Below are positions 935 to 62,554 of a DNA stretch of 64,000 nucleotides, piece after piece. The stretch is from positions 5,270,001-5,334,000 of the forward strand of contig OZ004614.1 of NCBI GenBank assembly GCA_963924565.1, written 5' to 3'. Both the position numbers and the translations under genes were made by a program. Below the pieces are notes generated by a model. The model did no database searches and was not told the origin of the DNA. It saw nothing but the letters and a program-made list of their open reading frames with translations. This DNA is from Ascidiella aspersa. Taxonomy: Eukaryota. Each line of letters begins with the position of its first letter. Within the stretch, counting starts at the first letter, position 1.

Positions 935-3900
935 ATGAAAGGTTCTTGAAAGTTTTTTACCGCGGAAATCTAAAATTTTGTTTTTTGCTTTTTCAAAAGG
1001 GCGTCATACGTTGACGTCACAATGCAAAAAGACTCCATAAATTCGGTCCAAAAAATGTACAATGAAATGGACACAACATACAGCGCAAAACCGTTTATTT
1101 TTTAATTAAACTGTTTCCTTTGAAAAGTCCATTACTTTCTAGAAACATTTTCATTGGGCCTTGATGGACATCTTAAAACTACCTGGTTTAGATAAAAGGT
1201 TCGGGCAAAGGAATCCTAAGCATGCTGTATTTTACATCACATTTTTTTTCTTAAACTATTTTTTGTTTTCTCTACTGTTACTCCATATTTTTCTGTTTTC
1301 CTTTAAAAACACAGTTTTGGTAATTGTTTTTCTTATAATCTTAACAATTTTCAGGTCATTATTTTATTTTGTTGGCTATTCTTTCAAAAGCTGTCCAAAG
1401 GTATCAAACTTTGTGTATTAAAAGTTTTTTTCGCCTAATTTTGCTTGATAAACTTCCCTTACAACTAGGTTGGCGAACCATGTGGCCGGATCAGTAAGGA
1501 AACGACAACCGTCGTATGTTGTAAAGCATGGTTTATGATTGCCAGCATTTGGGGCAACAATATAGTTCAGCTTTTCTGAACTTGACAACCATGACTGACC
1601 ATTTGTGGTTTGTGGTTGCATTTTTACCGTATTTCTGCAGCAAAATACCTTGGTGCACTTTAACATCGATAAATCTATAATCCGACTGGGAAATTGATCA
1701 GCGACTAAACAAATCACGTAAAAAATCCACAATCGTATGCGCTCCTGTGCTGGTGGTGTTTCTTAAATGCAAATATTAGAATTTTGATTGCGAATAATTT
1801 GGGCTCCGCATTATCTTTAAGTTACTACGGAAAGGCCTTAAACAAAAGCAACATTTATATCGTATCCCATGGCTTTCATTTAATAGCAAATAAACTTTTG
1901 ATAGTTCCACTCGTTTATGTTTTGTATTTACTGGGCAATTGTTGTTGACTTTCATCCTAACTGTTATATAGCGCGCAGTTTTTAACCGATAATATTTTTA
2001 ACGGCAATATTTTATCGCTTTTTGTGCTTTACTTGTCCGATGCAAGTGCGGATTGTTTCACATTCGGTTTCTTCAGTGTACTGTAGATTATACTTTTTTG
2101 TCTTTAAAATCATTGCTTTTTACCAAATACATTTGGTACCAGCCAAAAAAAAAACGGTACGACTTTTGTTCTTTACCAGTAATAATTCCACAAAAAGTTG
2201 TGGTTAGCTTTTAAAACAGTTTATTTGTTGCTATCAATAGCACACGAAAAGATCAGCCTAAAAACGAAAGTTATAAAAAATCACAAAGCGAGAAGGCTGT
2301 TTTTATAGAAACTTTGTCACGTACCTTTTTTATTGGCCGACTTGCAAAATAAATGTTTTTTTCTCTTTCGACGAACTTTTCATGACATATTCAGACACTG
2401 ATTAGCTCCTCTAAACATTAAAACATTGACGAAACACTACCTGGTATTTTTGTACTCTGTATGTAGCATTCTTCTTTACCGGAGTGTTAACAATGCGTAA
2501 CGAACCGCCGCCCATAAGTGTACAAACATTGTAAACAACAGTAAAATGAAAGCATCCGTCCAAAACAGTTGTTTTTAACTGGCGGCGCCCAACAATTTTC
2601 AAGGGGGTGCGAGCTCTACTCTAATATTTGAATTTTTATAATGATTTTATTGGTTCCATGTTGCGTTTGTTGTTAAATTTGCTTTCATGCTGTCCTATGC
2701 TTCGGATCAAAATTACGCTTGTGTAGATATAAACTGAAGAAAAACGGTTCATAATTTTGCGATTTGCGAACTTTATTTCGCTAATATGTGTTAATAGTTT
2801 CTTGTTTTTTGGGCAATATTTGCTACTTATTACGACCGATTTAGGAAGTTTTTAATCACAACAATATATTTAATCAATTTAAGTCAACAATTCTTATCAA
2901 AACTTGGTGGTTGACGAACGCAGAAAGCGGACGTAATTCCACACGATTATGAATTATCAACAAAACAAAACTGCAAAAATGTATTGTGGGTGGTGTGTAT
3001 TAGGTTGCGGAAAATGTACAAGTTGTGTGAAAGTTGAATATCTGGATTGCGCTGATCGCTGCTAATTTTGTTTGTTCTTCTATGTAACAAGCAGCATAAT
3101 AAAAAAAAACGTTTGCTCTTTTAAACTTATTTGAAAATGAATTATTTTTCAATCAATTTCAAGGTTTATCTTAGTTGTAAATTAAACGAAAAGAAAAACA
3201 AATTCGCTTTACGCAGCTAAAAATGGGTTGGGGGCGTACAATGTAATTCGTTGATATACCTATGAAGTACATTCCAGTGCATCATATACTATAATTAAGC
3301 CTGCAATGTGTATTAACCTCATATGGCTTCTTTATGTGAGCGTTAGCACAGATCAACAAGCTTCCCATAAAAGGCCTGGCGGTGCCTTCGGGCATCGTCC
3401 ATAAATAACTGGCAGTTGCATATTTGCTGTTGAACTAACGACGGCATGAAATAGGCTGCCAGGTTCTGATTTGAGGGGACAATTACATACGAGTGTACAG
3501 TAGCCGATGCCTGATTACAATTGTATTTTATTTTCGTCCCAGATTCAAAAAAAAGTCAGGTAAACGTCTTGTGGCAAAGAAGACAGTTTAAATATAACGA
3601 TGCTGGTACAGATACAAGGCAACTGTAGCTGCGGAATTACACCCAAAGTAAAACGATATGGGCTATATAAAAATATAGTTTCATTGCAAGAATATTTGTT
3701 GTTCCTAATGTTGACAAAACTCAAACAAGAAAATTTGAAGACGTATGTAGTTTTGTAGGTTTATACGCTCAATACATATTATTTCAGGTTGGTGGCAGAA
3801 ACTAAAATTGACGTCTTTCACTCTTTTATAACGCAGATTTGCAGTTTTCAGTTAATAATCTCACAAAATGCATACAGCTTTATTAAACAATGTGTCTTTA

Positions 3901-5136
3901 GTAAACAATGTGTAAACGTTTCACACAACTAAATATGGGTAGCCGCACTTACACTGTGCCCCATTTTTATCAATGGGGTTTAGGATTTAAATAATTAAAA
4001 TAAAGCAATCCTGGGTTTAGAAAAGTCGAAGCCGCCAATTTTAGCTTGTAATAAACAGCATCTCAGAACCAACGTGCGTGGTATACTTTAGAAGTATAAT
4101 AGTTGGAAAGGACATAAGAACAAAATGGATGTTTTTCAGTTTAAGTAGTTTATGTTAATGTAAGAAATGTTGGCTCTAAGGTTGTTACTTCGCCTAGCTA
4201 CATTTTGACAGCCGCTCTTAAGACTGTGATTACAGGGCGAGCGGATATGTCAGTAATACGCATAACACACATCGACACGTTCATAGTCTGTTGTTCATTA
4301 TCTCTGCGCGTGGTGCATCCGTATTGAATGACACTTTAATCAATTAATAATCTGTAGCGTACAACAGCTTGGTGTTGTAAAGGGGATGTGTATAAAACTG
4401 TTGTTTGTTCAATTCTGTCGCGCCTGCAATAAACGTGATACAAACGATACATGTCCTGTCGAAACCAAGCGGATTCATTGCTCGATATAGCGGTATAGCG
4501 TAGATAGCGCAATACAATTTTAAATCGAGGAGGACATGGTATGGAAACTTGTAGAGATTAATTTCCACTGTGAAACTGTTTTAAAAGTATATTGCTGTTT
4601 TAAAGCTTGAAATAACTATCAAAGCACATTATAACATGTATACCGCATTATGTAAACGTTCAAAGAAAGTTTTATGCAATTTTAGGCCGTAATGGTTATG
4701 CTGTAAATAATTAATAAGATAATATCAAAACAACCATAGGGACGGATTCTTGTCTGCAACTAAAATGAATATTTTTTCTTCACAAAAGTTCGTTGTCAAA
4801 AAGTTAGCTCTTTTTATGTTTTAATTGAATTAGAGGGGTCAAAACTTTTTACAGTTGCTTCTTACAAAGAATGTGGCATAGGCCTACATAAGAATTTGCA
4901 TTTTGGCATTTATTTCGTTACAATTGCCTAGAAGTTTGCTATTCGATTTGAAAAAGCTTGGCAATAAAAGTGATAATCCAACAATAGTAGAATGACACCA
5001 AACAGTAGGTCGCTATTCTTCTGAGCAGAGTCTGCTTTAACACTTCACATTTATTTTCAATAGCAGGAAGGCTAAACTAATAGGTAGCTAAACAAGCACT
5101 TACGAATAGTAATTCCGGATAACTTTTAAAATTTAA

Positions 5137-8100
5137 ATGGAGATCATAACTGTGGAAGCTGTGCTGATAGCTGCTTTGTCGAGCCTCTACATACCAGCAA
5201 CCTGCAGCCCTTCAGTCGACACCAATACAAGGTTAGATGACAAGCACGATTGTCCTATCAGTTGCACTTGGCGACAGGAAACTTGCATCACTGAAGCCCA
5301 GATGTGCGACGGCGAACCCGATTGCGCTTATGAAGACGAGAAGTATTGCGTTGAGTGCAAGAACGACGCGTTGTTGTGCGGGACGGCGTGTATCTCTCAA
5401 GCCAATATCTGCTCAGAGTTTTACGGAGTCGACAAATCTCAATGCGTCGGTCGCACAGACGCACTGAAATGCGCGAACACATGCCCGAGTGGATGGTGGT
5501 CGTGTCAGTCAGGTAACAACACTTGCATTGCTCACAGTTTGGTTTGTGACGACAGGACAGACTGCGACGACGGCAGCGACGAGTCAAACTGCGAAACTTG
5601 CCCCGACGATCGGCCCTGGAAGTGCGTCAGCGGAAGTCGGTGCATAAATCAAAGTCGTGTTTGCGACGGTAACGCGAACTGTAGTGACAGAAGCGATGAG
5701 ACCAACTGCACGATTTGCCCCAAAGCTCGGCCCTGGAAGTGCAAATTTGGAACTAAATGTATCGCCCAAAAACAGGTTTGCGACGGCGTAGAGGAATGCG
5801 AAAACGGTGGCGATGAATTGGATTGCACAAACTGCCCGGATAAACGATCATGGAAGTGTAAGACGGGAACCCGATGTATCGATGCAAGTTTGGTTTGCGA
5901 CGGCACCTTTAATTGCGAGGACCGTAGTGACGAGTCGAACTGCACAAGCTGCCCCCAAGATCGACCTTGGAAGTGTACAGACACAACTAGCAAGTGTATT
6001 CGCGAAAGTAAGTTGTGCGACGGCGAACATGACTGCAGCGACGAAAGCGACGAGTCGAACTGCACAACTTGCGCCAAAACAGCGTGGAAATGCAAATCGG
6101 AAAACAAGTGCATCAAGCGAACAGCTGTTTGCGACCTCATTCCAGACTGCGCCGACTCGAGCGACGAAAACTGCAAAAAAAATTGTCCGGAAGGCGAGTT
6201 TCGGTGCTTGGACGGAAGCAACTGTATTCCGAACGAGTGGAAATGCGGTGGCAGGTTCTGTTTGGACAACAGCGGCAGGCGAAACTGCACCTGCAAGAAC
6301 TACGAGAAAATGTGCGAGTGCTTGGACGGAAGCATTTGTCCGCCCACCGGCCAATGTGTTTTCGATAAATTTCTGGCCGACGGCTACAAGCACTGCCATG
6401 GCGGAGAGGACGAACCGTGTGAAAACATCGCCGAGGGAGTAATGCTCTGTTCCGACGCTAGACACAAAAACATCCTGCAGTCATTTCAGAACTACAGAAA
6501 CTCTACCTGCTGCAAGATCCACCGATCGCAACGGGATAACCGAGATGAGGTGGTGGTAACTAGAAGTTGGCTGTGCGTTAAAACTGGAGATTGCCGCTCC
6601 TATTACTTTTGTAACGAGAACAGAGCGCTTCCCACTTGGCACTTCTGTAGCAACCACTTCGATCCAGAGTGCAAGGATTCGATCAGCGGCTTCGGGTTCA
6701 AGTGCGCCGGACCCAGCAACACGGGAGTGTGCATTTTGCCTCAAATCAATCTCTACGACAACACGGCGCAGTGCTTAGACGAGTCAGATCTATGTTTCGT
6801 CGATGGCAAGTTCAAATGCTTCCTGTGCTTGGACAAGCGACTCGTCATATCGCAAAGCCAGGTTTGCGACGGGGTGGTCGACTGCTACGATCTTTCCGAC
6901 GAGTGCTTGTGCGGAAATCAAACGGTTTGCGACGATATCCTGGGCAACGCTAGGGACACTTGCCCTTCCAATCAAATGCACTGCCGCAACGAAACGGACT
7001 GCGTTGATATGGACAGAGTGCTGTGCAACGAGAGCACAAACTGCGAAAGCAATTCCACACGGCAGCGATGTCACCACGGTTTGCAAGATATAAGCGGGGG
7101 GAATGAAACAGTGACTTGCTACAACACCGCATTCAACAACACGCGCAAATTGGTGCGAGCGGTGAAATGCGATGGAAGGCCCGAATGCTGGGATTTGTCG
7201 GACGAATGTTCCGGCTGCCAAAGTCCTCCAGCCTTGTGTAACGACTCGTGTGTTGTCGTTAAATCGCAATCCGGACCGGTGTGTCTCGGATCGCCCAAAC
7301 TCGCCGGGCCTTTCATATGCGCCATTAATGAAACGCTTCTCTGCCCAAAGCGCTACATATGCTCCAACGGTGACCTCACGAGCATTGACGTCAATCTCTT
7401 TTGTGACGGCATAGCAGACTGCGACGACGGCTCCGACGAACTCGAAACGCGTTGCAACGCGACACGGTTTTATTGCCGCAACAAGAAGCCGATTTCCGTG
7501 GCAAAGAAATTCGTTGAAGACGGATTCAAGCAATGTTCGGACGGAAGTGACGAATGCCCGGCTGTCAGTAAGCGAAACTCGATCTTTTCCAATCAAAAGG
7601 AAATGATCGCGAACCCCTTTTTCAGGGCTTGCTTTTGGATTATGGGAAGTTTAGCTTGCGTGTTTAACCTGCTAGTTTTTGGCACCACCTTTAAAGAATT
7701 TTTTCTCCATCGTGATGATAACAACGTGCTGAAAGAAAGCACACACGTTTTTATAATGAGTCTGTCGGCTGCTGACTTTATGATCGGTTGTTATCTGCTT
7801 GCAATCGCTGTCAAGGGCCTTCAGTTTTCGGGTGATTACTGTTCGGTGGATGCTGCTTGGCGCACAAGTTCGACTTGTGCCGGGTTGGGATTTACACTGG
7901 TAGCAGCTTCCCAAATCAGCGCGTTCACAATGACAGCAATGACCGCCTTTCGCCTCTACACTGTGTGCAACCCATTTAACTCCAGATCGCTTAAAATGAA
8001 GTGGGTCTATTTGAGCTGCGTTAGTTGCTGGGTTTTAGGTTTTCTTTTAGCCGCTATTCCGTTGTTTCACTATTCGTCTGGTTATTTTGTTGCCTACGTT

Positions 8101-8727
8101 TGGTTTTCGTCTAGATTTTTTCGATCGGACACAATATCTTCTTACGCCATGTTTCAACTGGCGCACAGAATACAACGCAACTTAACCAACCCCACTTGGT
8201 TTGACGTGACACGGCTGATAGGCAAGACCTTTCCCAACCTTCCAATAACTGGCATCTTTGGTTATTATGGCGAAACTAGTGTTTGCATGCCCAGACTCTT
8301 CGTTTCTGTTAACGACCCTTCCTGGCAGTACTCTGTGCTTCTTATCACGCTTAACTTTACCATGTTTATTTTCATGCTTGTTTCGTATGTTATGATTTAT
8401 ATACAAAGCAACAAAATGAGCAAAGCAAGACAGAGTCAAGTGAATAGCAATATGCAAAAACGTATCTCTCGTTTGCTTATTACTGATTTTTGTTGCTGGA
8501 TCCCGCTGTGCGTTTGCGGTTTCTTGGCGGTAGCTGGTGTTCCCCTTACTAACGATGTTTACATTATCAGTGCTGGTATTTTGTTGCCCATCAACAGTGC
8601 TTTAAACCCGCTGCTATACTCCACGTTTCTAAAACAAATGTTCACTCGAATTAAAAAGCGTGCGAGCTCTCATAGTCAAAAGACTACCAGGCAAACTGAA
8701 ATGGGTGTAGTTGGCACACATAGCTAA
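5137..8727 (+). CDS. LDLa-repeat GPCR (GRL101/RXFP-like 7TM, no LRR), copy 1, intact, intronless, 1196 aa
   Basis: Signal peptide; ~15-16 LDLa-like modules (CD..DC.D.SDE..C); hinge SIFSNQKEMIANPFFRACFWIMG; TM2 SLSAADFMIGCYL; TM6 TDFCCWIP; TM7 LPINSALNPLLY. Confidence 0.93.
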   Translation: MEIITVEAVLIAALSSLYIPATCSPSVDTNTRLDDKHDCPISCTWRQETCITEAQMCDGEPDCAYEDEKYCVECKNDALLCGTACISQANICSEFYGVDKSQCVGRTDALKCANTCPSGWWSCQSGNNTCIAHSLVCDDRTDCDDGSDESNCETCPDDRPWKCVSGSRCINQSRVCDGNANCSDRSDETNCTICPKARPWKCKFGTKCIAQKQVCDGVEECENGGDELDCTNCPDKRSWKCKTGTRCIDASLVCDGTFNCEDRSDESNCTSCPQDRPWKCTDTTSKCIRESKLCDGEHDCSDESDESNCTTCAKTAWKCKSENKCIKRTAVCDLIPDCADSSDENCKKNCPEGEFRCLDGSNCIPNEWKCGGRFCLDNSGRRNCTCKNYEKMCECLDGSICPPTGQCVFDKFLADGYKHCHGGEDEPCENIAEGVMLCSDARHKNILQSFQNYRNSTCCKIHRSQRDNRDEVVVTRSWLCVKTGDCRSYYFCNENRALPTWHFCSNHFDPECKDSISGFGFKCAGPSNTGVCILPQINLYDNTAQCLDESDLCFVDGKFKCFLCLDKRLVISQSQVCDGVVDCYDLSDECLCGNQTVCDDILGNARDTCPSNQMHCRNETDCVDMDRVLCNESTNCESNSTRQRCHHGLQDISGGNETVTCYNTAFNNTRKLVRAVKCDGRPECWDLSDECSGCQSPPALCNDSCVVVKSQSGPVCLGSPKLAGPFICAINETLLCPKRYICSNGDLTSIDVNLFCDGIADCDDGSDELETRCNATRFYCRNKKPISVAKKFVEDGFKQCSDGSDECPAVSKRNSIFSNQKEMIANPFFRACFWIMGSLACVFNLLVFGTTFKEFFLHRDDNNVLKESTHVFIMSLSAADFMIGCYLLAIAVKGLQFSGDYCSVDAAWRTSSTCAGLGFTLVAASQISAFTMTAMTAFRLYTVCNPFNSRSLKMKWVYLSCVSCWVLGFLLAAIPLFHYSSGYFVAYVWFSSRFFRSDTISSYAMFQLAHRIQRNLTNPTWFDVTRLIGKTFPNLPITGIFGYYGETSVCMPRLFVSVNDPSWQYSVLLITLNFTMFIFMLVSYVMIYIQSNKMSKARQSQVNSNMQKRISRLLITDFCCWIPLCVCGFLAVAGVPLTNDVYIISAGILLPINSALNPLLYSTFLKQMFTRIKKRASSHSQKTTRQTEMGVVGTHS

Positions 8728-11641
8728 ATTTATTTTTCACGTTTTGTCAAAAGTATATTTTTAGGGGTTATTTTTTGACGTCACTGTATGTTATTTATTA
8801 TCTGTATAAAAAAACCTTGTAATGTCCAACATAATGTTAAACTTTCCCATTATCTCCGTTTGGTTTATACTGCGTCGAAGTTTTCGTGCGTCGTAATGTT
8901 ATTGATCCCCTAAGTCGCATAAATATATGCATATATTTATTTATATTTGTTCTATACACGAATCAAGTATAATCCATTGTGTAACTTTCCATATACTTGT
9001 GGTTTGGTTGGTTTTCTTCTCTTCTCCGTATTTGTAATTTTAAACACAAAGTTTGTTCACAAGATATCTCTTCTGAATTGGTAAATATAGTACAAAACGC
9101 GCAACATATAGCATTGAGTTTGGTAAGGTTGCCGTTAATAGCTGGCAGCTTTGATGTTTAACAAAAAGTGAAAATGTTTAATATCTTTATGAGAAATTAC
9201 TTACATGACGATAATCAAGGATACAGCGTCTTGGTTAATTCGCCTTAAAAGCCCATGCAATGCCGCTTATTCACCTTAAGAGCCGGCCCAGTTCTAGGCT
9301 CGGCACCAACTGACGAACTGAATTCGACTGAATTGACAGTTGTTTAACACTTCAGAAAAATAAATATGGAGATAATATCGATGTCATCTAAACTGGAAAT
9401 TAATGCAGACTGGCCAATTAAAAGTGGCTTTTGACACAGCCAATTATAATTGTATTTGAAATATTTCAAAAATATTTTGTTTTCTTTGTATCTGTAGTAA
9501 GACGTTTGCTTACTCGCTAAACCAGGGTTGTCATGGGCAACCTTCTTCAACCTATAGCTGCTTGTGGTCCATGTAACAAGCAGCATAATAAAAAAAAAAA
9601 AAAAACATTTGCTCTTTTAAACTTATTTGAAAATGAATTATTTTTCAATTTCAATGTTTATCTTAGTTGTAAATTAAACGAAAAGAAAAACAAATTCGCT
9701 TTACGCAGCTAAAAATGGGTTGGGGGCGTACAATGTAATTCGTTGATATACCTATGAAGTACATTCCAGTGCATGATATACTATAATTAAGCCTGCAATG
9801 TGTATTAACCTCATATGGCTTCTCTATGTGAGCGTTAGCACAGTTCAACAAGCTTCCCATAAAAGGCCTGGCGGTGCCTTCGGGCATCGTCCATAAATAA
9901 CTGGCAGTTGCATCTTTGCTGTTGAACTAACGACAGCATGAAATAGGCTGCCAGGTTCTGTTTTGAGGGGACAATTACATACGAGTGTACAGTAGCCGAT
10001 GCCTGATTACAATTGTATTTTATTTTCGTCCCAGATTCAGCCTATTTAGTTTGAAAAAGTCAGGTAAACGTCTTGTGGCAAAGAAGACAGTTTAAATATA
10101 ACGATGCTGGTACAGATACAAGGCAACTGTAGCTGAGGAATTACACCCAAAGTAAAACGATATGGGCTATATAAAAATATAGTTTCATTGCAAGAATATT
10201 TGTTGTTCCTAATGTTGACAAAACTCAAACAAGAAAATTTGAAGACGTATGTAGTTTTGTAGGTTTATACGCTCAATACATATTATTTCAGGTTGGTGGC
10301 AGAAACTAAAATTGACGTCTTTCACTCTTTTATAACGCAGATTTGCAGTTTTCAGTTAATAATCTCACAAAATGCATACAGCTTTATTAAACAATGTGTC
10401 ATTAGTAAACAATGTGTAAACGTTTCACACAACTAAATCTGGGTAGCCGCACTTACACTGTGCCCCATTTTTATCAATGGGGTTTAGGATTTAAATAATT
10501 AAAATAAAGCAATCCTGGGTTTAGAAAAGTCGAAGCCGCCAATTTTAGCTTGTAATAAACAGCATCTCAGAACCAACGTGCGTGGCATACTTTAGAAGTA
10601 TAATAGTTGGAAAGGACATAAGAACAAAATGAATGTTTTTCAGTTTAAGTAGTTTATAGTTAATGTAAGAAATGTTGGCTTAAAGGTTGTTACTTCGCCT
10701 AGCTACTTTTTGACAGCGGCTCTTAAGACTGTGATTACAGGGCGAGCGGATATGTCAGTAATACGCAAAACACACATCGACACGTTCATAGTCTGTTGTT
10801 CGTTATCTCTGCGCGTGGTGCATCCGTATTGAATGACACTTTAATCAATGAAAAATCTGTAGCGTACAACAGCTTGGTGTTGTAAAGGGGGTGTGTATAA
10901 AACTGTTGTTTGTTCAATTCTGTCGCGCCTGCAATGAACGTGATACAAACGATACATGTCCTGTCGAAACCAAGCATATTCATTGCTCGATATAGCGGTA
11001 TAGCGTAGAAAGCGCAATACAATTTTAAATCGAGGAGGACATGGTATGGAAACTTGTAGAGATTAATTTCCACTGTGAAACTGTTTTAAAATTATATTGC
11101 TGTTTTAAAGCTTGAAATAACTATCAAAGCACATTATAACATGTATACCGCATTATGTAAACGTTCAAAGAAAGTTTTATGCAATTTTAGGCCGTAATGG
11201 TTATGCTGTAAATAATTAATAAGATAAAATCAAAACAATCATAGGGACGGATTCTTGTCTGCAACTAAAATGAATATTTTTTCTTCACAAAAGTTCGTTG
11301 TCAAAAAGTTAACTCTTTTTATGTTTTAATTGAATTAGAGGGGTCAAAACTTTTTACAGTTGCTTCTTACGAAGAATGCGGCATAGGCCTACATAAGAAT
11401 TTGCATTTTGGCATTTATTTCGTTACAATTGCCTAGAAGTTTGCTATTCGATTTTAAAAAGCTTGGCAATAAAAGTGATAATCCAACAATAGTAGAATGA
11501 CACCAAACAGTAGGTCGCCATTCTTCTGAGCAGAGTCTGCTTTAACACTTCACATTTATTTTCAATAGCAGGAAGGCTAAACTAATAGGTAGCTAAACAA
11601 GCACTTACGAATGGTAATTCCGGATAACGTTTAAAATTTAA

Positions 11642-38900: not shown

Positions 38901-39552
38901 TTCGTCTGGTTATTTTGTTGCTTACGTTTGGTTTTCGTCTAGATTTTTTCGATCGGACAGAATATCTTCCGACGCCATGTTTCAACTGGCGCACAGAATA
39001 CAACGCAACTTAACCAACCCCACTTGGTTTGACGTGACTCAGCTGATAGGCAAGACCTTTCCCAACCTTCCAATAACTGGCATCTTTGGTTACTATGGCG
39101 AAACTAGTGTTTGCATGCCCAGACTCTTCGTTTCTGTTAACGACCCTTCCTGGCAATACTCTGTGCTTCTTATCACGCTTAACTTTACCCTGTTTTTCTT
39201 CATGCTTGTTTCGTATGTTCTGATTTATATACAAAGCAACAAAATGAGCAAAGCAAGACAGAGTCAAGTGAATAGCAACATGCAAAAACGTATCTCTCGT
39301 TTGCTTATTACTGATTTTTGTTGCTGGATCCCGCTGTGCGTTTGCGGTTTCTTGGCGGTAGCTGGTGTTCCCCTTACTAACGATGTTTACATTATCAGTG
39401 CTGGTATTTTGTTGCCCATCAACAGTGCTTTAAACCCGCTGCTATACTCCACGTTTCTAAAACAAATGTTCACTCGAATTAAAAAGCGTGCGAGCTCTCA
39501 TCGAAGCACTACCAGGCAAACTGAAATGAGTGTTGTTGGCAGGGATAGCTAA
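35968..39552 (+). pseudogene. LDLa-GPCR copy 5 (most divergent), single nonsense codon
   Basis: Colinear and in frame apart from TGG>TGA at 38017-38019 (RPEC*DLSDEC vs RPECWDLSDEC). Confidence 0.88.
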
Positions 39553-40940
39553 ATTTATTTTTCACGTTTTGTAAAATGTGTAATTTTAAGGGGTCATTTT
39601 TTGACGTCACTGTATGTAATTTATTGTCGGTATAAAACAACACTTGTAATGCAAACATCAAGTTTGAAAAGTTTTCTATTTTCTCTTTATGTTTATACTG
39701 TGTCGGAGTTTTCGTGTGTCGTAATGTTTTTAATGACCTAAGTCGCAGAAATGTATGTATATGTTTATTTCTATTTGTTCTATACACGAATCAAGTATAA
39801 TCTATTGTGTAAATTTGCATATTTTCATTCTCTTCTACGTATTTATAATTTCAAACACAATGTTAGTTTACAAGAGAGAATTATTTTCTGAATTTGTAAA
39901 ATATAGTGGATAACGTGCACCATATTGAATTTAGCTTGATAAATTTGCCATGAATAGCCGACAGCTTTGATTTTTAACAAAAAATAGGATGTTTTACATC
40001 TTTACGAAAAATTGCTTATATGGCGTTGAGAAACGATACAGAGATTATAGGTTAATTCCCTTAAAAGCATTATGATGTCGCTTAATTACGATAAGAGCAG
40101 GAACTAGGTTCAGCACCAACTGAGGAATTAAATTAGATTATACTGACATTTGTTTGACATTTCGGAAAAAGAAAAATGGATAAAGGTCACTGTGATCTAA
40201 AATAGAAATTAATGCAGACTGACAACTTAAAGGTTGCTTTTAACATAGGCCTGCTGCACGCAGGCTTTCTAATTGTATTTAAAATTGTTCAAGAGTTTAT
40301 CATTTATAAGACGTTTGCTTACGCGCTACACCAGGGTTCGGCAACCTTCCCTAACCTATAATAAGGCATGTTTATTACAACATTGTTGGGATAAATTTTC
40401 ATGTTCTGCAAAGACCTATTACAGTTTCGTTTTGGTCCAAGACACGAACATGGTTTCCGACCCCAGTGCTACACGAATAATAACTTAAATGTTATCAAAT
40501 TGGTTTCATAGTTTCTTGTACATAACATTAACTGTTTTAGGCAAGTTAATTGTATCGCTAAATGAATGTGCTAACCGGGGGAGATTCAGAAACCAAGGCT
40601 TCCAAAGGAACCAAAATTAGTTGAAAGTCGGACGTGATTTATCAATTGCCAAATATTAAATAATTTCAGCAAACTTTCGACGCTGTATAATTGCATGGTT
40701 GTCAAATTTTCAGTTGTCAGAAAAAAAATAATAAGGAACTTTTCTGTAAAGTAATGCGGTCGGAAACCTATAGTGACAACGGGGCGCCGTAATTCAACTT
40801 TAAAATCAAGATCATTTTTGCTATGCTCGGTTGGCACTTCGCGTGTTCAGGAATTATAAATAAATTTAACAGGCTTTGCATGTATAACGTTATCTGAAGT
40901 TTTGATCACAATTCGCCTTAAAGGGAATTTCTAAGGTAAG

Positions 40941-44400: not shown

Positions 44401-47400
44401 TTGAACTTGTAAACGGGTATTTTAGCATGTCCTTGGTTTTGCCAATTAATTAATGTATAAGCCTAACAAAAATACAATTATTGTTCTCACAGAAAAACTG
44501 TGGTATAAATTTCGTTCTTAGTTTCTGAAAAGCAGTAACAATCTTAAACGGTGTAAGCTAAACTACTTTTTACTCAGATTATTCAATATTATTTTAGATA
44601 ATGCTTGCCTGTACGCCAAAATGTAAGTCGTATTAGTCAATTTTAAAATCATGTCCGAGTCAAGTTGTTTTTCGTAAAATCGCAAGGTACAGTGTACTGT
44701 AAGGCGTCCACTTAGGGAATAAAGAAGCGTAAACTCACTCTTCCCTGCTTATCTTCCACTGGAACATCTGGAACATGAATCTCGCCTTGCGACCTTGACC
44801 GTTCGACAGGATACGGACCGTTCCGTCTTCTGGACTGGCACACCTGTATGTGTAACATTTCTATAGCGTAGCCTATACCAGTGACCTAGTAATGCAGTGG
44901 TAGGGTTCTTAAACTGGGCTCCATCATGGCTACTTGGGATACGTGAACGTGTTTTGGGGGTTTCTCGAAGGCCTAATTAAACCATTAGAGTTTTTTTTTA
45001 TTTTACTTTTGCATTGTTTCGGGCCAAAAGTGGCAGATTTCTGAAGTCTATATGTATTGTTATTTTAATTAATGACGTCATCTATAAAAATATCTTGCCT
45101 ACTTTGACACACGAGTAATAAACAAAAAAATTAGAGCTCCTCTGTGTAAAAAGTTCAGGAACCCCCTGTTATGGCCTATCGATCTAGTAATACAGTTGAC
45201 CTGAACGCAAAATTGTAGGATGTGGTCATAGCTAATGGACAGCAATAAAATCACAAGCAAACGTTGATCGATTGGTTTTATTAGGCCAGTGATTCCCAAA
45301 CTTTTTTTCTCGCGAACCATTTTGAGCTTTTGTACAGTGTTGATGTACCACCTAAGTTACACCTTACCAGAATATCTCAAACTTTAACTCAGTGGTTCTT
45401 AACCTTTTTTCAGCCGCGCCCCCCTTTGGTAATTTTCTCATGTCTTGCGCCCCCCTAATATTTCGACATTTTGCAATTAAATATCACTGAGAAAACAGGA
45501 AAATAGTGAAGGAAGGGATTGTTGGTCGCGCGAAGCGCGAATAATTTTGAGTTTTAGTTGGTCGAATTGGCTAAACTGCAACCGAAGAGGCGTTTCGCAT
45601 TGGGCACGCAACAAATTGCGCGAGCTCGACACATTGATTTTATCGAGCTGATTTTGACAAACGTGTTGCGAGGGCATTTACTCCACAGTTGTAAGAGTTA
45701 TTATGTCGAGCGCAAAAAATGTCAAGCGCAAATATTATACATTGCGTTATCGTGTTTCAAAAGATGTAACGACACACAATACAACGGCAATATTGCAAAA
45801 ACAATATAGTTTCGCGCAAAAAAAGTTCGACTCCCCCTGTTGCTATAGCCTGTTATCATATATAAAATATGGATGAAAAATAGTCCGAAAGGGCGATAGC
45901 TTTTATCGTTTATCTATAAGTTAATTTAATAGGACGGTGATACCATGGATTTTCTAAAAGGGAACTATAAGATTGGCGCGCAGCGCGAAAATTTTTGCAG
46001 TTTTAATGTTAAAGTTGGCAAAAAACAGAGTTTGTATGTAGGAATTATGCCTAACCCAAACGAAACCATTAAAATCACTGCAAAAATTAAAAATATATAA
46101 AGTCGAGCTCGCGCCCCCCTTAGAATTCCTTGGCGCACCCCTAGGGGGGTGCGCCCCCCCAACCCCCCCCCCCCCGGTTAAGAACCGCGAACCGCTGCTT
46201 TAACTATTTTAGCATATTATACAAAATAAGTAAGCAGAATTAAACTTTACCCAGGAAGACAAAGAAGCCATAAATTAAACAAAACCCAAGGTTCAATGCG
46301 ATAGTTGTTTTTTCTTCACCAGCTGGTCGATACATACTACAACTACACCGCTCACTATTAGTTTATTACTACATATATATTAAACCAGCTAACAATTAGC
46401 GTTTTATTATCTTGAACAAGATAAGTGTTACGTCATAAACGTGCGAAACCTCAAGTTAAACGAGGTAACCAAAACGCAGCACGGCAAATTACCCAATCTG
46501 AAAGTTTAAAAAGTTGAACGTTTTCGAAATTTATACGTATGCTGAAGTTAGTCGCGTACCACCTGAAAGACTCTCGCGTACCACCGGTGGTACGCGTACC
46601 ACAGTTTGGGAACCACTGTATTAGGCGGAAAGGCGAGTAAAGTTTAAATTAAAACCAGGTCAGAAATGCAATAACTTTTAGCTGGCCGTTCTTGGGCCAA
46701 ATTAGGAAACATTTAGACAAAGTGTTGATGCTAATAAACTCGTACCCGAATAAAAACCGACAGACAAAAACTTTTGTCCGGCCATACATCTAAAAACTAA
46801 ACGTCAAGCTAATTAAGTGTGGTAAATCGTATAATAATTAAATTGATACAAAGCAAAATTTCAAAGCTATAACAGCTGAAGTAAAATACCTGCCGGTTAT
46901 GAGGTAGTGATAGTTTTTCATCACTTCAAAAGCCTCACTCGTTGTTGCGTAGCAACTGTCCAATGACGTCACTATGTCGTCATCGCCGAATACGTCATCC
47001 ATATCAACCGATACATAAACGGGAACACCTGTCGATTGTTTCGGGTGATTAAAAATGTTATTCAGCTTCCCCTATGCTTTTGGGACGCATAATGTTTGAT
47101 AGCTCTTTCCACGCAAATTTAGTGAAACTGCAAATGACGGTTTCGCTGTTTACTGTTAATATTTTCACAGGGATATCAAAGAAGAGTGTAACATCCCACG
47201 ATTATAGTTCCGGGCTATTCCTTTGCCTACTTTTGTGACGGATCGACCCATGTCCCTAATAAATATTCAGACCATTAATTATTATTTGTCAGGACCTAAA
47301 CTAGTGTGCACATAAAATAAATATTGAAGCTTTCGATCGACGACAGACTTTACGTTTAGTCTAAGATTATTATTAAATTGTCAATAAACCACGGCTCGTT

Positions 47401-50400
47401 GGTCTAGGGGTATGATTCTCGCTTCGGGTGCGAGAGGTCCTGGGTTCAATTCCCGGACGAGCCCACTTTACTACATTTTACATGGTAATCAAAAAGTTTA
47501 TCGATTTTATATCTGAGATTAAATATATTTTGATTGAAAAAAGTTGCTCGTTGGTCTGGGGAAGTTTTTATCAGTCTTTTATTGCTAGCGGCACCCCTCA
47601 GAAATATTAAATGGATTGGGGCATCCCTACAAGATTTTACCGTTGGTAATTTACTAGAATGTCATAATATCGGAACTGGAACAACACTCTTCTACTTTAC
47701 AGAACGCAGGAAGCTATAATTGGATTTATTCCACTCTAAAAAAAAATCAGGTTCTTAAAGATTCCAAAATATTTCTCGGCAACCTTGAGCGTTAGAAATT
47801 GCACCCAAGGGTGCCGCGGCATCCCGGTTGAGAACCAGTGGTCTAGTGTGTGACTCTCGCTTCGGGTGCGTGAGGTCCCTATAGTTTCATTTCTCATTTC
47901 ATTCAAATCCCGGACGATGCCAGTTTCTTTTTCCCTAGACAAAGATTCAGTGTTCACACACTTTAATTCTTTCTCGTTTTCCTTGGCATGTAAAACTTCC
48001 CAGCCACAAAGCCCAGACGATCTGATTTTATTTCATTACCTTTGGTTTATTTAAAATCTTATATATTTCGGTGGAAATTTAAACCATATTTCAGTGGAAA
48101 TTTAAACCAACAAAGTCCAAACTATTTTCATTACCAAATTATATAATTCTTCCCACCTACAACCATGGAAGGCCTGGCGCCCAGTTTGCATACTATTTTT
48201 ATCACCAAATTATATAATTCTTCCCACCTACAACCATGGAAGGCCTGGCGCCCAGTTTGCATACTATTTTTATCACCAAATTATATAATTCTTCCCACCT
48301 ACAACCATGGAAGGCCTGGCGCCCAGTTTGCATACTATTTTTATCACCAAATTATATAATTCTTCCCACCTACAACCATGGAAGGCCTGGCGCCCAGTTT
48401 GCATACTATTTTTATCACCAAATTATATAATTCTTCCCACCTACAACCATGGAAGGCCTGGCGCCCAGTTTGCATACTATTTTTATCACCAAATTATATA
48501 ATTCTTCCCACCTACAACCATGGAAGGCCTGGCGCCCAGTTTGCATACTATTTTTATCACCAAATTATATAATTCTTCCCACCTACAACCATGGAAGGCC
48601 TGGGGCCCAGTTTGCTCTTCGGGTGAAAGTCGCTTCTTTGGTAGAGATTCATCGCAACACTCAAGGTTCCTTGAGATGTGGCGAAGTTCAGTGTCCTGTT
48701 AACATTGCAGCAAAATATAAAACTAGAGCCATATCCGATTTATTATTTATGTAGAAAAATGTTTTTTATATCTTTTTTTTCTGTTTATTGTATCATTTTT
48801 TCAATATCATAAATTGGTGTCGAAATAAAGTATTACATTGGGCCAGTAATCGACACTGACAATAGCAATTGATTAAGTTAAATGCGCAAATTAACGACTG
48901 ACGTGGACGCTTGACTTTTTGCAGCACGTAACCGCTTAGTAAACGATAGGAAATTTACTAACCTATTCGTTTAGATCAGGGGTTCTAAAACTGGGGTCCA
49001 TGGACCCCTTGGGGGTCCGTGAATTAGTTTTAGGGGGTCCATGAAGGCTTAATTGAAATATTAATGTATATTTAAAAAGTAATCATTTTTTCAAAGAAAG
49101 CAGTTTAATTAAAAACAAAACGGTTTTGCACTGACTGTATTTAGACCTCATTTCACTTTTATATTTTTTAGACTGAAATCAACAGATTTATGAAGTCTAT
49201 TTGTATTGTGACGTCAATTTATGACGTCATTATTTGAATTTTTTCATTTCGTGGTTCACGCGACATCAAAAAAGTTTTAGGGGTCCTAGATACCCCACTC
49301 TATGGAGTGTGTGTAACTATTTTATGAGGGTGTGTAACTATTCTATGGTGTGTGTAACTATTCTATTCTGTGTGGGTAACTATTCTATGGGGTTTGTGTA
49401 ACTATTCTATTGGGTTTGTGTAACTATTCTATGTGTGTGTAAGTATTCCATGGGGTTTTGTAATCACGTGTCCCTATCCACAACTTGTAATACAATTCGG
49501 TTGCATTAGGTGATTAGCTTGTCCCTAAACCACCAAGGGGTCCATGGACCCCAGTTTACTAACCCGTGCTGCAGAACTATATAGTTGTCCAAAACTGCTT
49601 GCAGCACTAACCTGACGCGTGGTGTGAGTGCGAATGACGAGCTGACCACGTACTTATCGTCGTACCGACACTCGATGCTCATCAGTTGTTCGTACTTTTC
49701 AGGACTGGAGAAGACAATCTCGTTGAGGAACCTGTACTCGTTTCCGTCATGCTGCGAACATAAACGTTGTACTGCAAAAGCTCTCGGGTTAAGGCTCGAT
49801 CGCTGTCATATTTATTGATCTTTCTAAATTGTCATTTTTCCCAATTCTGATTAGGGTAATCAGGTGGCACTCTATGAAGACAAATTGCTTTGAATTCTTG
49901 ACAAGCTTTCGCACAACCGTGCTTCATCGGGTCAAACTGGAAATGCAGGCAATTAAAACGTTGTAATAGGGTTGGTTTTTACCAAAAAATAGAAAAAAAG
50001 TTTTTGAATACATTTCATTCAAATTGTCACTAAACAGCGTGAGGGCCTTTTCTGTTTATTGGCTATCATTCCTCAACAAACTTGCTGATAAGTGTTTGTG
50101 TCGCAAAAACGCGATCCGCGGCCCAAGCAGTTTATTTCGGCCCGCTGCTTTTTTTAGTTATTTCAGAGTATTTTCTATAATGTATTACGCTTGGAAGGCA
50201 TCCTAGGATATTCCTACTCTTACCAGCTTATCAGAACCATGGAATTTAAAGATTATTTTAAGATGAATCACACGTTGTATTAATGTATTCGAGATCCCAA
50301 TTTTTCATCCCGCCAAGACATTTTCTGCTTCTGTTCAAAACGAATTGTCCACCCTTGCTCTATACTTACAATCACCCTCATGCCGCAAGTGGCGTATGGA

Positions 50401-53772: not shown

Positions 53773-53932
53773 TCTTTGTATATGGCCGTATTTGTCCAAA
53801 TTCTAAATAGAGAAATCAGGTGGCACTGTATAAAGACAAATTGTATTTGATTCTCGACAAGCTTTCGCACAACCGTGCTTCATCAGGTCAAAGTATGATA
53901 CTTTGACCTGATGAAGCACGGTTGTGCGAAAG
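53773..53932. mobile_element. Penelope-like retroelement remnant with inverted hammerhead-bearing ends
   Basis: Perfect 35-bp inverted repeat 53862-53896/53898-53932; flanked by direct repeat aaagaacataca (53761-53772 and 53929-53940). Confidence 0.65.
53853..53892 (-). ncRNA. Minimal type I hammerhead ribozyme motif with intact core
   Basis: Minus strand tttgac-CTGATGA-a-gcac ggtt gtgc-GAAAGCTT-gtcgag. Stem I ttgac/gtcga, stem II gcac/gtgc, palindromic AGCT stem III. Confidence 0.7.
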
Positions 53933-54085
53933 AACATACAGAAGTAGTTATCAATTTGAACTTTTCGAATAACTCTTTATTCATTTCCAACAGTCCATGA
54001 CCACATGACTATCTTGAACAAACATAAAGAGTTATTCGAAATGTTGAAAATGATACCTTCTTCCATATGGGCTTTGATATTCTTC
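53933..54085. repeat. Decayed copy of the 51064-51223 palindromic element
   Basis: catacagaagtag...ttcgaataactctttattcattt and ataaagagttattcgaa...atgggctttgatattctt arms. Confidence 0.8.
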
Positions 54086-61091: not shown

Positions 61092-62554
61092 GCTTCTTTG
61101 GCCTGAAAATGGTCGCAATGTGACCTGTATCCCTTACTATTCGTGTAATGTTCGGGTTGGCGACCATTTTCTAGTCTTGGACAAAACCAAACTCAGAAAG
61201 ATCTTTGTGGAACGTAATAAATTTATACTGATAATTTTGTACTTAAAATAAGTTAAGGCACTTTATTATAAGTTGTAAAAGGTTGCCGACCCATGGTATA
61301 GCGTGTAAGCGATCGACAAAGTCCCAATCTATTCATAGACAGTTTAACTTAAGCCCACGTTAAGTCAAATGTGAAACATAAGAAGTCAAGTCTTTGTTCA
61401 AGTTACTAACATAACAATTCAAGTCATTTAAATAAAAATAAAATGTTAAATCATTTACAATTGGTAAACTCATCGGATCCTGAGCGACAGTATAATAACC
61501 AAACAAAACAAAAAAGTAACATATTTCGAGAAAACTGCTTTAAAAGCAGAAATTTGGGGGAAATAGGCAATTTTTCTAAAAAAATATTAAGTTCATGTCA
61601 AGTGAAGTGAGTCGACCCAAAACACTTAGGTCAAGTCAAATCATTGTGAAATATCGACTTACGTGCACTTAAATTCATTGACTTAGGTCGTTACAACACT
61701 GGCAAATCGTATACCTGATGCTTTCGTGGTGCTCGCAATTTATAATTTTTCACGTTAAAATACTGCTTTATTGTTTGTTATGCACATTGTTGTTGTGCTT
61801 TTATGTGAAAAACGTTCACTAGTATACAATTCTAATGTTTTAACCAGAAATGTATTTGACTTAAAAACACAACAACCAAACTGGTTACTTTATTTATTTG
61901 TTTATGTAAACATGGCCATCGAGAAAGACGTTAATTATATTTGTTTAAGGCGAAACCTAAAAAAAAACTGAAGTAAAAAAGCAAAAAAGTATTTACAAGC
62001 AGGGTCTTGCATACTAAAATTTGGACAAAATCTATATTGCAAAACTCAGAAAGGCTATTAAAAAAATTGGCGGAGGTAACCAATCAAAGCCTTCAATCAA
62101 CTAGTTTTGATATCAGAAAAAAAAAACTATATCTATACAAACTATAGGAGATAGAGGTTAAACAATTAGTGGATTAACATGCCATAAACGGTTAAATATT
62201 CTTAAGGATGTAATTTTAACGTTAAATAGGTAAGTATGAAGTCATTTAGCTGTGACGTAAAGCATTTTGGCCACCGGGAACTGTCGTCTTACTGGAGGAT
62301 TTAAGTCTAAAAATAGGTTTAGATACAAAGAAAATGAAAGATTACTGAAACGTTTTACTTGAAACAAAGCATATATAGTAGAATATAAATATTGTTTTAC
62401 GCCTAGTTCTCTTCCCATGATTCCAAACCACCTGTATTTACACCTTTTTGAAAAAGGATTAATTTTTTAGCAAGAGAAAAAAAAAACAGAAAAATTCGCG
62501 AAATCCCCATTGTGAAATCTGACGTGTCGTAGCTGAGCAGGTGCTGGATACAAA

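What the first reader, a model, noticed from the sequence alone, without database searches (positions are those of the whole stretch)
5137..39552. Tandem array of intronless, LRR-less LDLa-GPCRs behaving like a diversifying receptor repertoire
Seen: five recent paralogs, each a single 3.5-kb ORF with ~15-16 LDLa modules joined directly to an RXFP/GRL101-type hinge and 7TM, with no leucine-rich repeats. Known: RXFP1/2 and GRL101 carry LRRs between LDLa and 7TM, and LDLa-repeat GPCRs are expanded in ascidians. Inference: variable ectodomains on a near-constant signalling domain, plus module gain/loss, mosaic exchange and frequent disabling, look like a birth-and-death recognition system (immune, allorecognition or chemosensory) rather than a hormone receptor.
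Basis: partly seen in the sequence, partly recalled or inferred. Interest (0 to 1): 0.85.

Follow-up and report, generated by a model that had tools for sequence, protein, structure and literature searches.

The report
Sea-squirt LDLa-repeat GPCR gene array
This is a cluster of recently duplicated, single-exon receptor genes in a sea-squirt genome; the family (LDLa-repeat GPCRs without leucine-rich repeats) was described in Ciona in 2008 and is still orphan, and here it has at least 133 copies that are being shuffled, resized and broken, as in sensory or immune receptor repertoires.

Summary
Five + strand paralogs lie at 5137-39552. Two are intact (1196 and 1162 aa) and three are broken. Three more copies flank the window, so the local cluster has 8 copies, 4 of them intact.

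Each protein has a signal peptide, 8 canonical LDLa modules, a family-conserved Cys-rich core of about 440 aa holding 6 LDLa-like modules, and an LGR-type 7TM. No LRR was found by Pfam (24 paralogs) or in AlphaFold models.

The architecture is not new. Kamesh et al. 2008 (PMC2396169) described these "LDLRR-GPCRs" in Ciona, with ESTs mostly from haemocytes.

What this genome adds:
- It has at least 133 loci, and the 24 I examined are mostly whole-CDS single exons.
- They carry 0-22 N-terminal modules on a C-terminal part of constant length.
- The expansion is species-specific.
- Gene conversion is strong (Rm 69; 0 of 2000 permutations).
- dN/dS falls from about 1 in the first modules to 0.1-0.2 in the 7TM.

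Birth-and-death evolution is supported. Positive selection is not shown, and the immune or chemosensory function remains inference. RNA reads were almost absent.

First readers of this scan noted the same family on other pieces of this genome.

The parts
5137..8727 (+). c1: intact single-exon LDLRR-GPCR gene, 1196 aa
   Evidence: ORF. Pfam gives Ldl_recept_a x10 plus 7tm_1 and no LRR.
5251..6288 (+). c1 N-terminal array of 8 canonical LDLa modules (aa 39-384)
   Evidence: Cys-pattern and family-HMM hits. The number of modules in this part varies from 0 to 22 across 24 paralogs.
5206..5451 (+). Variable patch 1 (about codons 24-105: end of the signal peptide and modules 1-2)
   Evidence: 51% of aa sites vary among 6 in-frame copies. 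Omega is 0.94-1.7 in most intact pairs and 6.0 for c6-c7, p=0.014 uncorrected. Depth of an independent DNA run collapses at 5273-5469.
5906..6025 (+). 120-nt indel of exactly one LDLa module (present in c1, c2, c5, c6, c7; absent in c0, c3, c4)
   Evidence: Alignment gaps and coordinates. A joint that skips 5905->6026 is seen in DNA run X10 (5 reads) and in one X1 contig. Those reads may come from c3 or c4.
6103..6390 (+). Variable patch 2 (about codons 325-420: junction of the array and the core)
   Evidence: 45% of aa sites vary. dN is 0.09-0.23 but dS is also high, 0.2-0.6 in most pairs, which points to old segments kept apart; omega is 0.3-0.7. X10 depth is near zero at 6258-6454.
6292..7584 (+). 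Conserved Cys-rich core of about 440 aa (aa 386-816) with 6 LDLa-like modules and a sub-domain of unknown fold
   Evidence: The C-terminal part from here to the stop is 797-834 aa in 22 of 24 paralogs; a 731-aa copy and a copy that begins at the core are the exceptions. There are many invariant Cys and Asp. AF2 gives pLDDT 79 and no solenoid. The sub-domain aa 415-565 has a best VIA Z of 3.5.
7585..7614 (+). P10-like stretch just before TM1 (FSNQKEMIAN, aa 817-826)
   Evidence: It aligns with FNPCEDIMGY of LHCGR and TSHR. F817, S818, E822 and N826 are invariant in 24 paralogs.
7615..8724 (+). LGR-type rhodopsin 7TM and C-tail, with a ~60-aa ECL2 insertion (motif at 8266-8294)
   Evidence: PDB sequence hits to LGR, RXFP1, TSHR, LHCGR and FSHR. 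Foldseek top hits are LHCGR, TSHR, FSHR, RXFP1 and LGR4. The ECL2 motif pattern hits 133 loci and the reversed control hits 0. Omega is 0.09-0.24.
11642..15148 (+). c2: pseudogene (+2 at 13456-13457, +8 at 13732-13739, 94-nt deletion after 13798)
19948..23436 (+). c3: intact gene, 1162 aa, lacks one LDLa module
28296..31788 (+). c4: pseudogene (1-nt deletion after 28916, 4-nt deletion after 30439); shares a tract near 29520-29820 with c5 and c0
35968..39552 (+). c5: most divergent copy, with a single nonsense codon TGG>TGA at 38017-38019

Best explanation
The region is part of an 8-gene tandem and inverted cluster of tunicate LDLRR-GPCR genes (LDLa-repeat, LRR-less, LGR-type rhodopsin GPCRs). 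This orphan family was first described in Ciona.

Shown here:
- In most of the 24 members I examined, the whole CDS from signal peptide to C-tail is one exon.
- This genome holds at least 133 such loci, many in tandem arrays.
- Most of the expansion took place within this species' lineage, separately from Ciona's.
- The local copies evolve by unit duplication, by frequent gene conversion or unequal exchange (including between the inverted sub-arrays), by in-register gain or loss of LDLa modules, and by pseudogenisation.
- Constraint rises from the N-terminus (near neutral) to the 7TM (strongly purifying), and every Cys of the intact copies is conserved.

Inferred mechanism:
- The variable N-terminal LDLa array captures extracellular protein or lipoprotein ligands through its Ca2+-caged acidic pockets, as in LDLR, LRP and megalin.
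- The family-invariant Cys-rich core, the P10-like stretch before TM1 and the enlarged ECL2 pass that event to the 7TM, by analogy with the tethered-agonist hinge of glycoprotein-hormone receptors and the LDLa-dependent activation of RXFP1.
- Biologically it is a fast-turnover exoreceptor repertoire for environmental or non-self proteins, most likely on haemocytes. It is not an endocrine receptor.
For: - Architecture.
- Published family and haemocyte ESTs: PMC2396169.
- Nearest 7TM relatives are Ciona 42-46%, Phallusia 41%, Clavelina 39% and Styela 37%. Every Pfam-annotated hit has LDLa and/or 7tm_1, and none has an LRR family.
- Family size: 109 scored 7TM matches, 10 further loci, and 133 motif loci against 0 in the control.
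- Single exon: 20 of 24 members start with a signal-peptide-like Met in the same open frame as the 7TM.
- Constant C-terminal part of about 800-834 aa against 0-22 N-terminal modules.
- Species-specific clades: 22 of 24 own members form one clade (SH-aLRT 99) that excludes 13 Ciona members.
- Exchange.
- Selection gradient.
- P10-like alignment.
- An independent DNA run loses depth exactly at the two variable patches.
Against: - No ligand, cell type or signalling output was tested.
- The only RNA run sampled gave 7 reads, all in the 7TM part that the paralogs share. Transcription of these particular copies is therefore unproven.
- dN/dS near 1 in patch 1 fits relaxed constraint as well as diversifying selection.
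- Half of the local copies are broken, so this particular array may be decaying rather than adaptive.
- The E/D of the DRY motif is replaced (FRL), so G-protein coupling cannot be assumed.
- The haemocyte expression comes from Ciona ESTs, not from this species.
Confidence: 0.7

Rival explanations
1. It is a chemosensory repertoire. The family would serve as the ascidian counterpart of odorant or vomeronasal receptors, with one or a few genes expressed per sensory cell in the siphons, coronal organ or larval papillae, detecting waterborne proteins.
For: - Intronless CDS, tandem arrays, at least 133 genes, pseudogenes and species-specific clades.
- Near-absence of reads in a bulk RNA run, as expected for genes expressed in rare cells.
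- Ciona lacks vertebrate-type olfactory receptors (table in PMC2396169).
Against: - Ciona ESTs for the family come mostly from blood and haemocytes, not from sensory tissue.
- LDLa arrays bind macromolecules, not small odorants.
- No expression data exist for this species.
Confidence: 0.2
2. The array is mostly decaying, neutral copy-number noise. The family has an ordinary physiological role, for example lipoprotein or vitellogenin sensing by a few members. This array is a recent segmental amplification drifting toward pseudogenes, and its variability reflects relaxed constraint only.
For: - 4 of the 8 local copies are broken.
- Omega in the variable patches is not significantly above 1.
- Almost no RNA reads.
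Against: - The four intact copies keep all 115 Cys and a 7TM with omega 0.09-0.2 at dS about 0.1, so purifying selection has acted since they duplicated.
- Outside this array about 92% of the loci scored keep open frames of 700 aa or more.
Confidence: 0.2
3. It is an assembly artefact. Stacked haplotypes or mis-joined repeats would inflate the copy number.
For: - Ascidians are highly heterozygous.
- One block pair (13799-25432 against 22087-33828) is 95.9% identical over 11.7 kb, which lies within the possible range of allelic divergence.
Against: - There are eight copies, each with its own lesions, indels and mosaic pattern. Pairwise divergence reaches 10%, and two copies are inverted.
- There are no N gaps in the window.
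- The same family sits in many arrays on nine large contigs.
- Haplotype stacking can give at most one extra copy.
Confidence: 0.04

Closest known systems
Ciona LDLRR-GPCRs (Kamesh, Aradhyam and Manoj 2008, BMC Evol Biol 8:129, PMC2396169)
   Same: Both have N-terminal LDLa repeats, no LRR, and a 7TM most like the INSL3/relaxin and LGR receptors. Both are lineage-specific expansions and orphan. The 7TM is 42-46% identical to Ciona members, and the two group together, apart from the LRR-bearing GRL101-like receptors.
   Different: - At least 133 loci here, against 14-15 confirmed (plus 14 unclassified) in the 2008 Ciona set.
- Up to 22 N-terminal modules (29 LDLa-like in all), against 1-10.
- Expansion is independent of Ciona's.
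- The paper I read does not describe the single-exon structure, the conserved 440-aa core, the P10-like stretch, the ECL2 insertion or the gene-conversion dynamics.
RXFP1/RXFP2 (type C LGRs)
   Same: The 7TM is of the LGR type (7tmw E 1.7e-20; Foldseek rank 8), and LDLa is present in the ectodomain. In RXFP1 the LDLa module is needed for activation (cited in PMC2396169).
   Different: RXFP1 and RXFP2 have one LDLa module plus 10 LRRs that bind relaxin or INSL3. Here there are no LRRs, there are many LDLa modules, and there are no orthologues across genera.
Lymnaea GRL101 and GRL101-like receptors of protostomes
   Same: Multiple tandem LDLa modules sit on an LGR-type 7TM. Both have been proposed as sensors of large (lipo)protein ligands.
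   Different: GRL101-type proteins carry LRR Pfam domains (P0017, P0019, P0020, P0033) and form a separate clade (SH-aLRT 100).
Glycoprotein-hormone receptors (LHCGR, TSHR, FSHR)
   Same: They are the best Foldseek matches for the 7TM. The stretch before TM1 aligns with their FNPCEDIMGY hinge end, and ECL1 WxTxxxC is shared.
   Different: Their ectodomain is LRR plus hinge and binds cystine-knot hormones. They are conserved single-copy genes. Their DRY-equivalent is ERW, against FRL here.
Vertebrate odorant-receptor and innate immune receptor repertoires (analogy only)
   Same: Intronless coding exons, tandem arrays, birth-and-death turnover, pseudogenes, gene conversion and species-specific clades.
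   Different: They are unrelated in sequence apart from the rhodopsin fold. Here ligand recognition would rest on a modular LDLa ectodomain, not on the TM pocket, an LRR or an Ig domain.

Membership tests
Tunicate LDLRR-GPCR (Kamesh 2008) | Rhodopsin-family 7TM most similar to LGR/INSL3-relaxin receptors | tested here: met
   PF00001. The best PDB hits are a C. elegans LGR, RXFP1, TSHR, LHCGR and FSHR.
Tunicate LDLRR-GPCR (Kamesh 2008) | One or more LDLa modules in the N-terminal ectodomain | tested here: met
   PF00057 at E 1e-54 with 10 stretches. The family HMM finds 14 modules in c1.
Tunicate LDLRR-GPCR (Kamesh 2008) | No leucine-rich repeats | tested here: met
   No LRR Pfam family in c1-c5, in the mid region at E<=10, or in 24 paralogs. 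The AF2 models show no solenoid, and the ectodomain matches only megalin/LRP2.
Tunicate LDLRR-GPCR (Kamesh 2008) | Groups with Ciona LDLRR-GPCRs, apart from LRR-bearing LGRs | tested here: met
   All 43 tunicate rows fall on one side of a branch with SH-aLRT 100, separated from 4 GRL101-like rows. The top 7TM hits are ascidian proteins with LDLa and/or 7tm_1 and no LRR family.
RXFP1/2 (type C LGR) | LRR domain between the single LDLa module and the 7TM | tested here: not met
RXFP1/2 (type C LGR) | Activated by relaxin or INSL3-type peptides | not testable with these tools
   This needs a binding or cAMP assay.
GRL101-type receptor | Multiple LDLa modules followed by LRRs | tested here: not met
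   LDLa modules are present and LRRs are absent. It forms a separate clade.
Birth-and-death multigene receptor repertoire (evolutionary mode) | Large family in tandem arrays with species-specific clades and pseudogenes | tested here: met
   At least 133 loci, arrays on C2, C5, C6 and C8, species-specific clades, and 12 of 109 loci with open frames under 700 aa, 4 of them in this array.
Birth-and-death multigene receptor repertoire (evolutionary mode) | Positive (diversifying) selection on ligand-contact sites | tested here: inconclusive
   Patch 1 has omega 0.9-1.7 in most pairs and 6.0 in one pair, p=0.014 uncorrected. Patch 2 has omega 0.3-0.7 in most pairs. Recombination rules out tree-based site tests.
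Birth-and-death multigene receptor repertoire (evolutionary mode) | High polymorphism or copy-number variation between individuals | tested here: inconclusive
   DNA run X10 shows many differences and loses depth at the variable patches, but reads from paralogs cannot be told apart from alleles.
Chemosensory or immune receptor (function) | Expression in sensory cells or haemocytes | not tested
   One RNA run of unknown tissue gave 7 reads. Haemocyte ESTs are reported for Ciona only.

The most novel reading that the evidence does not exclude
The LDLRR-GPCRs would be the main diversified exoreceptor repertoire of ascidians. In this reading they form a protein-sensing GPCR system of a hundred or more genes. 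A plug-in array of 0-22 LDLa modules sets specificity. A constant core, a P10-like tethered agonist and the 7TM convert binding into G-protein signalling. The system is used by haemocytes or sensory cells for non-self or environmental recognition. No such modular LDLa-based recognition repertoire is known in any animal.
Probability: 0.3. Interest if true: 0.8.

Novelty: new member of a known kind. Interest (0 to 1): 0.45.

Why it matters
Tunicates are the sister group of vertebrates. They lack vertebrate-type odorant receptors and adaptive immunity, and how they sense their surroundings and non-self is still poorly understood. This orphan GPCR family has been known since 2008 but has drawn almost no follow-up in the literature I could search.

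In this genome it has at least 133 single-exon genes with a swappable LDLa array on a constant signalling chassis, and it evolves as sensory and immune repertoires do. That makes it a concrete, testable candidate for such a system. It would also be a natural experiment in how LGR-type receptors can be driven by a non-LRR ectodomain.

If the family proves to be an ordinary lineage-specific expansion without a recognition role, the finding stays a well-documented example of gene conversion and module shuffling.

Tried and rejected
- Cryptic LRRs: rejected (Pfam; AF2; Foldseek).
- Known fold for the non-LDLa sub-domain aa 415-565: none. The best VIA Z is 3.5 and pLDDT is only 67.6.
- ESM Atlas on the core returned only generic LDLa clusters at scores of 0.77 or less.
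- Tandem Repeats Finder on c1 found no DNA-level repeat. The modules within one gene are too diverged, so the 120-nt indel is a rare in-register event, not slippage of near-identical units.
- Expression: one RNA run with about 6% of it sampled gave 7 reads and no splice joints. This is not evidence of silence.
- Reads as a test of polymorphism or copy number: confounded by paralogs that are 94-100% identical.
- Tree-based site tests of selection: not attempted, because of pervasive recombination.
- The 40-64 kb part of the window has no Pfam-recognisable ORF.
- Literature: four further searches found no paper on this family other than PMC2396169. The library does not hold most subscription journals.
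- The species name was not determined. The runs are coded "organism A", and the nearest homologues are ascidian.


Full report
**Observation.** Two are intact: c1 at 5137-8727 (1196 aa) and c3 at 19948-23436 (1162 aa). The other three are broken:
- c2 has a +2 insertion at 13456-13457, a +8 insertion at 13732-13739 and a 94-nt deletion after 13798.
- c4 has a 1-nt deletion after 28916 and a 4-nt deletion after 30439.
- c5 has a single nonsense change, TGG>TGA, at 38017-38019.

Self-BLAST shows repeat units of 6.5-8.3 kb that include about 3 kb of upstream and about 1 kb of downstream flank. Identity is 85-97% and changes along the unit. There are no N runs.

Fetching the flanks showed that the array is larger. 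A broken copy, c0, lies 0.5-4 kb upstream of the window; it has a TTG>TAG nonsense change and a 1-nt deletion near the end. Two intact inverted copies, c6 and c7 (1199 and 1198 aa), lie 0.35-11 kb downstream. A more distant member of 1370 aa lies about 21-25 kb upstream. The cluster of close paralogs therefore has 8 copies, 4 intact and 4 broken, with CDS identity of 90.3-97.3%.

**Architecture.** Pfam finds only Ldl_recept_a and 7tm_1. It finds no LRR family on the proteins, none at E<=10 on the stretch between the LDLa array and the 7TM, and none in any of 24 full-length paralogs from this genome.

An HMM trained on the family's own modules counts 14 LDLa-like modules in c1, 8 canonical ones at aa 39-384 and 6 further ones at aa 401-806.

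AlphaFold2 on aa 386-1196 with a 54-sequence alignment gave pLDDT 79 and pTM 0.69, with small disulfide-type modules and no solenoid. Foldseek matched the 7TM to LHCGR, TSHR, FSHR, RXFP1, LGR4 and a C. elegans LGR. It matched the ectodomain only to megalin/LRP2 LDLa arrays. A sub-domain at aa 415-565 is Cys-rich and beta-rich but is not LDLa. It folds with modest confidence (pLDDT 67.6) and matches no solved fold (best Z 3.5).

**The family in this genome.** The 7TM of c1 found 109 scored matches, all at E<1e-100, out of 311 first-look candidates. A Ciona homologue used as query added 10 further loci. A degenerate DNA pattern for the near-invariant ECL2 motif YGETSVCMPR hit 133 loci, against 0 for the reversed control. 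So there are at least 133 members on nine large contigs, many in arrays such as C2:35.36-36.69 Mb, C2:38.30-39.24 Mb and C6:1.42-2.44 Mb.

In 20 of the 24 members I examined, a signal-peptide-like Met opens the same uninterrupted frame that ends after the 7TM. The CDS is therefore a single exon.

The C-terminal part, meaning the Cys-rich core plus the 7TM, is 797-834 aa in 22 of the 24. The exceptions are a 731-aa copy and one that begins at the core. The N-terminal part ranges from 38 to 989 aa, which is 0 to 22 LDLa modules. The core is conserved across the family and in other ascidians, with many invariant Cys, Asp and Glu.

Of the 109 loci scored, 12 have open frames under 700 aa, and 4 of those belong to this array. 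Disabling is therefore frequent here (4 of 8) but not across the family (about 8% elsewhere).

**What is already known.** Kamesh, Aradhyam and Manoj (2008, PMC2396169) described this architecture in Ciona intestinalis under the name LDLRR-GPCRs. Their account includes:
- 14-15 confirmed members with 1-10 LDL-A repeats;
- no LRRs;
- TM regions like the INSL3/relaxin receptors;
- a lineage-specific expansion;
- a proposal that the ligands are lipoproteins or large protein complexes;

The nearest 7TM relatives of c1 are Ciona (42-46%), Phallusia (41%), Clavelina (39%) and Styela (37%) proteins. Every Pfam-annotated hit has PF00057 and/or PF00001, and none has an LRR family. The host is therefore an ascidian, and these genes belong to that family. 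The architecture itself is not new. Four further literature searches found no later work on the family.

**Evolutionary mode.** In a tree of the hinge plus 7TM region, all tunicate members separate from LRR-bearing GRL101-like receptors (SH-aLRT 100). Of the 24 members sampled from this genome, 22 form one clade (99) that excludes all 13 Ciona members grouped with them. The other two form a second own-genome clade. Expansion has therefore been independent in the two lineages, and no 1:1 orthologues are seen. Sister receptors with almost identical 7TM regions differ by up to six modules, for example L041 with 8 and L046 with 14.

Within the local cluster, one exact 120-nt module is present in five copies and absent in three. 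The best-matching partner of each copy changes every few hundred bases. For example:
- c1 is 100% identical to c4 over nt 1-150 but only 70.7% to c6 and c7.
- c1 is 98.7% identical to c6 over nt 1351-1500 but only 88% to c4.
- c0, c4 and c5 share a tract at alignment 1351-1650.

Among 245 informative sites, incompatibility between neighbouring sites is 0.363, against 0.517 +/- 0.007 after permutation, a value reached in 0 of 2000 permutations. The Hudson-Kaplan minimum is 69 exchanges. Gene conversion or unequal exchange, including exchange between the inverted sub-arrays, is therefore well supported.

**Selection.** The table gives Nei-Gojobori omega between intact copies by region.

| Region | Omega |
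|---|---|
| First 350 codons | 0.59-0.93 |
| Core | 0.31-0.54 |
| 7TM | 0.11-0.24 |

Variation is focal. Among the in-frame copies, 51% of aa sites vary in aa 1-115 and 45% in aa 350-430, against 19-21% elsewhere in the ectodomain and 11% in the 7TM. All 115 Cys are conserved in the intact copies.

Patch 1 has omega of 0.9-1.7 in most intact pairs and 6.0 for c6-c7 (p=0.014, uncorrected). Patch 2 has high dN but even higher dS (0.2-0.6 in most pairs), so it consists of old segments that have escaped homogenisation.

The pattern fits a conserved scaffold with fast loops. It is compatible with diversifying selection but does not prove it.

**Reads.** I laid four runs on window 3500-9400, within the 6,000-letter limit.

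The RNA run X11, with about 6% of it sampled, gave 7 reads. All lie in the 7TM part that the paralogs share, and there were no splice joints. Expression in that sample is very low, and transcription of c1 itself is unproven.

The DNA run X10 comes from another sample of the same species label. It shows many differences, most of its reads are 97-99% rather than 99% or more identical, and it loses depth at 5273-5469, 5667-5863 and 6258-6454. The first and last of these are the patches that vary among paralogs. A joint that skips exactly the 120-nt module appears in X10 and in one X1 contig. These data are compatible with high allelic or copy-content variation. They cannot be separated from cross-mapping of paralogs.

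**Mechanism (inferred).** The stretch before TM1 (FSNQKEMIANPFFR) aligns with FNPCEDIMGY(D/K)FLR of LHCGR and TSHR. From established knowledge of those receptors, that segment is their hinge-end tethered agonist. F817, S818, E822 and N826 are invariant in 24 paralogs.

ECL2 carries a conserved insertion of about 60 aa relative to the LGRs and RXFP1. The Arg of DRY, the CWxP motif and the NPxxY motif are kept, but DRY reads FRL.

I therefore propose three steps. The variable LDLa array captures protein ligands. The invariant core, with its two membrane-proximal LDLa modules, repositions the P10-like stretch and ECL2. The 7TM then signals. None of this was tested.

**Verdict.** This is a well-supported new set of members of a known, orphan, tunicate-specific GPCR family. 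Its scale and dynamics here (at least 133 single-exon genes, 0-22 modules, pervasive conversion) are not described in the literature I could search. The functional reading (immune, allorecognition or chemosensory) remains a reasonable hypothesis, and its only outside support is the haemocyte ESTs of Ciona.

Noticed in passing
window 5137-6290 (and the family consensus, alignment A1): Nearly every canonical LDLa module ends in ...SDExNCTxC. This puts an N-C-T glycosylation sequon on the sixth cysteine of each module, so the array may be glycosylated at every module boundary.
   Followed up: no
window 8050-8300 (c1 aa 975-1055): ECL2 is about 60 aa longer than in the LGRs and RXFP1. It is predicted to be structured (two helices and short strands) and ends in the near-invariant GYYGETSVCMPRLF.
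   Followed up: partly
window 47393-47464 (+): There is a tRNA-Pro (CGG) gene in the 22-kb spacer between the + strand copies and the inverted copies. No Pfam-recognisable ORF lies in 39.6-64 kb.
   Followed up: partly
window 53855-54070: Long near-perfect hairpins match many miRNA-precursor models on both strands, well below their gathering scores. No hammerhead family appears in Rfam at E<=1, so another first-reader note of a minimal hammerhead here is not supported by this scan alone.
   Followed up: partly
G000:C2:35.36-36.69 Mb (e.g. L054): A large array of 861-889-aa family members has no N-terminal LDLa array at all, only signal peptide, conserved core and 7TM. This shows that the core alone is a viable receptor form.
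   Followed up: partly
window 9008-9439, 15406-15822, 23694-24110, 32058-32460, 39828-40278 and 62548-63005 (-): A 3' flank segment of about 430 nt, 70-75% identical between copies, follows each + strand copy. It recurs inverted about 1.3 kb downstream of c6, so the duplication unit includes it.
   Followed up: no
window 6790-7596 (-) and 37618-38424 (-): ORFs of 268 aa lie antisense to the receptor CDS in several copies. They are probably a by-product of codon composition and were not examined.
   Followed up: no
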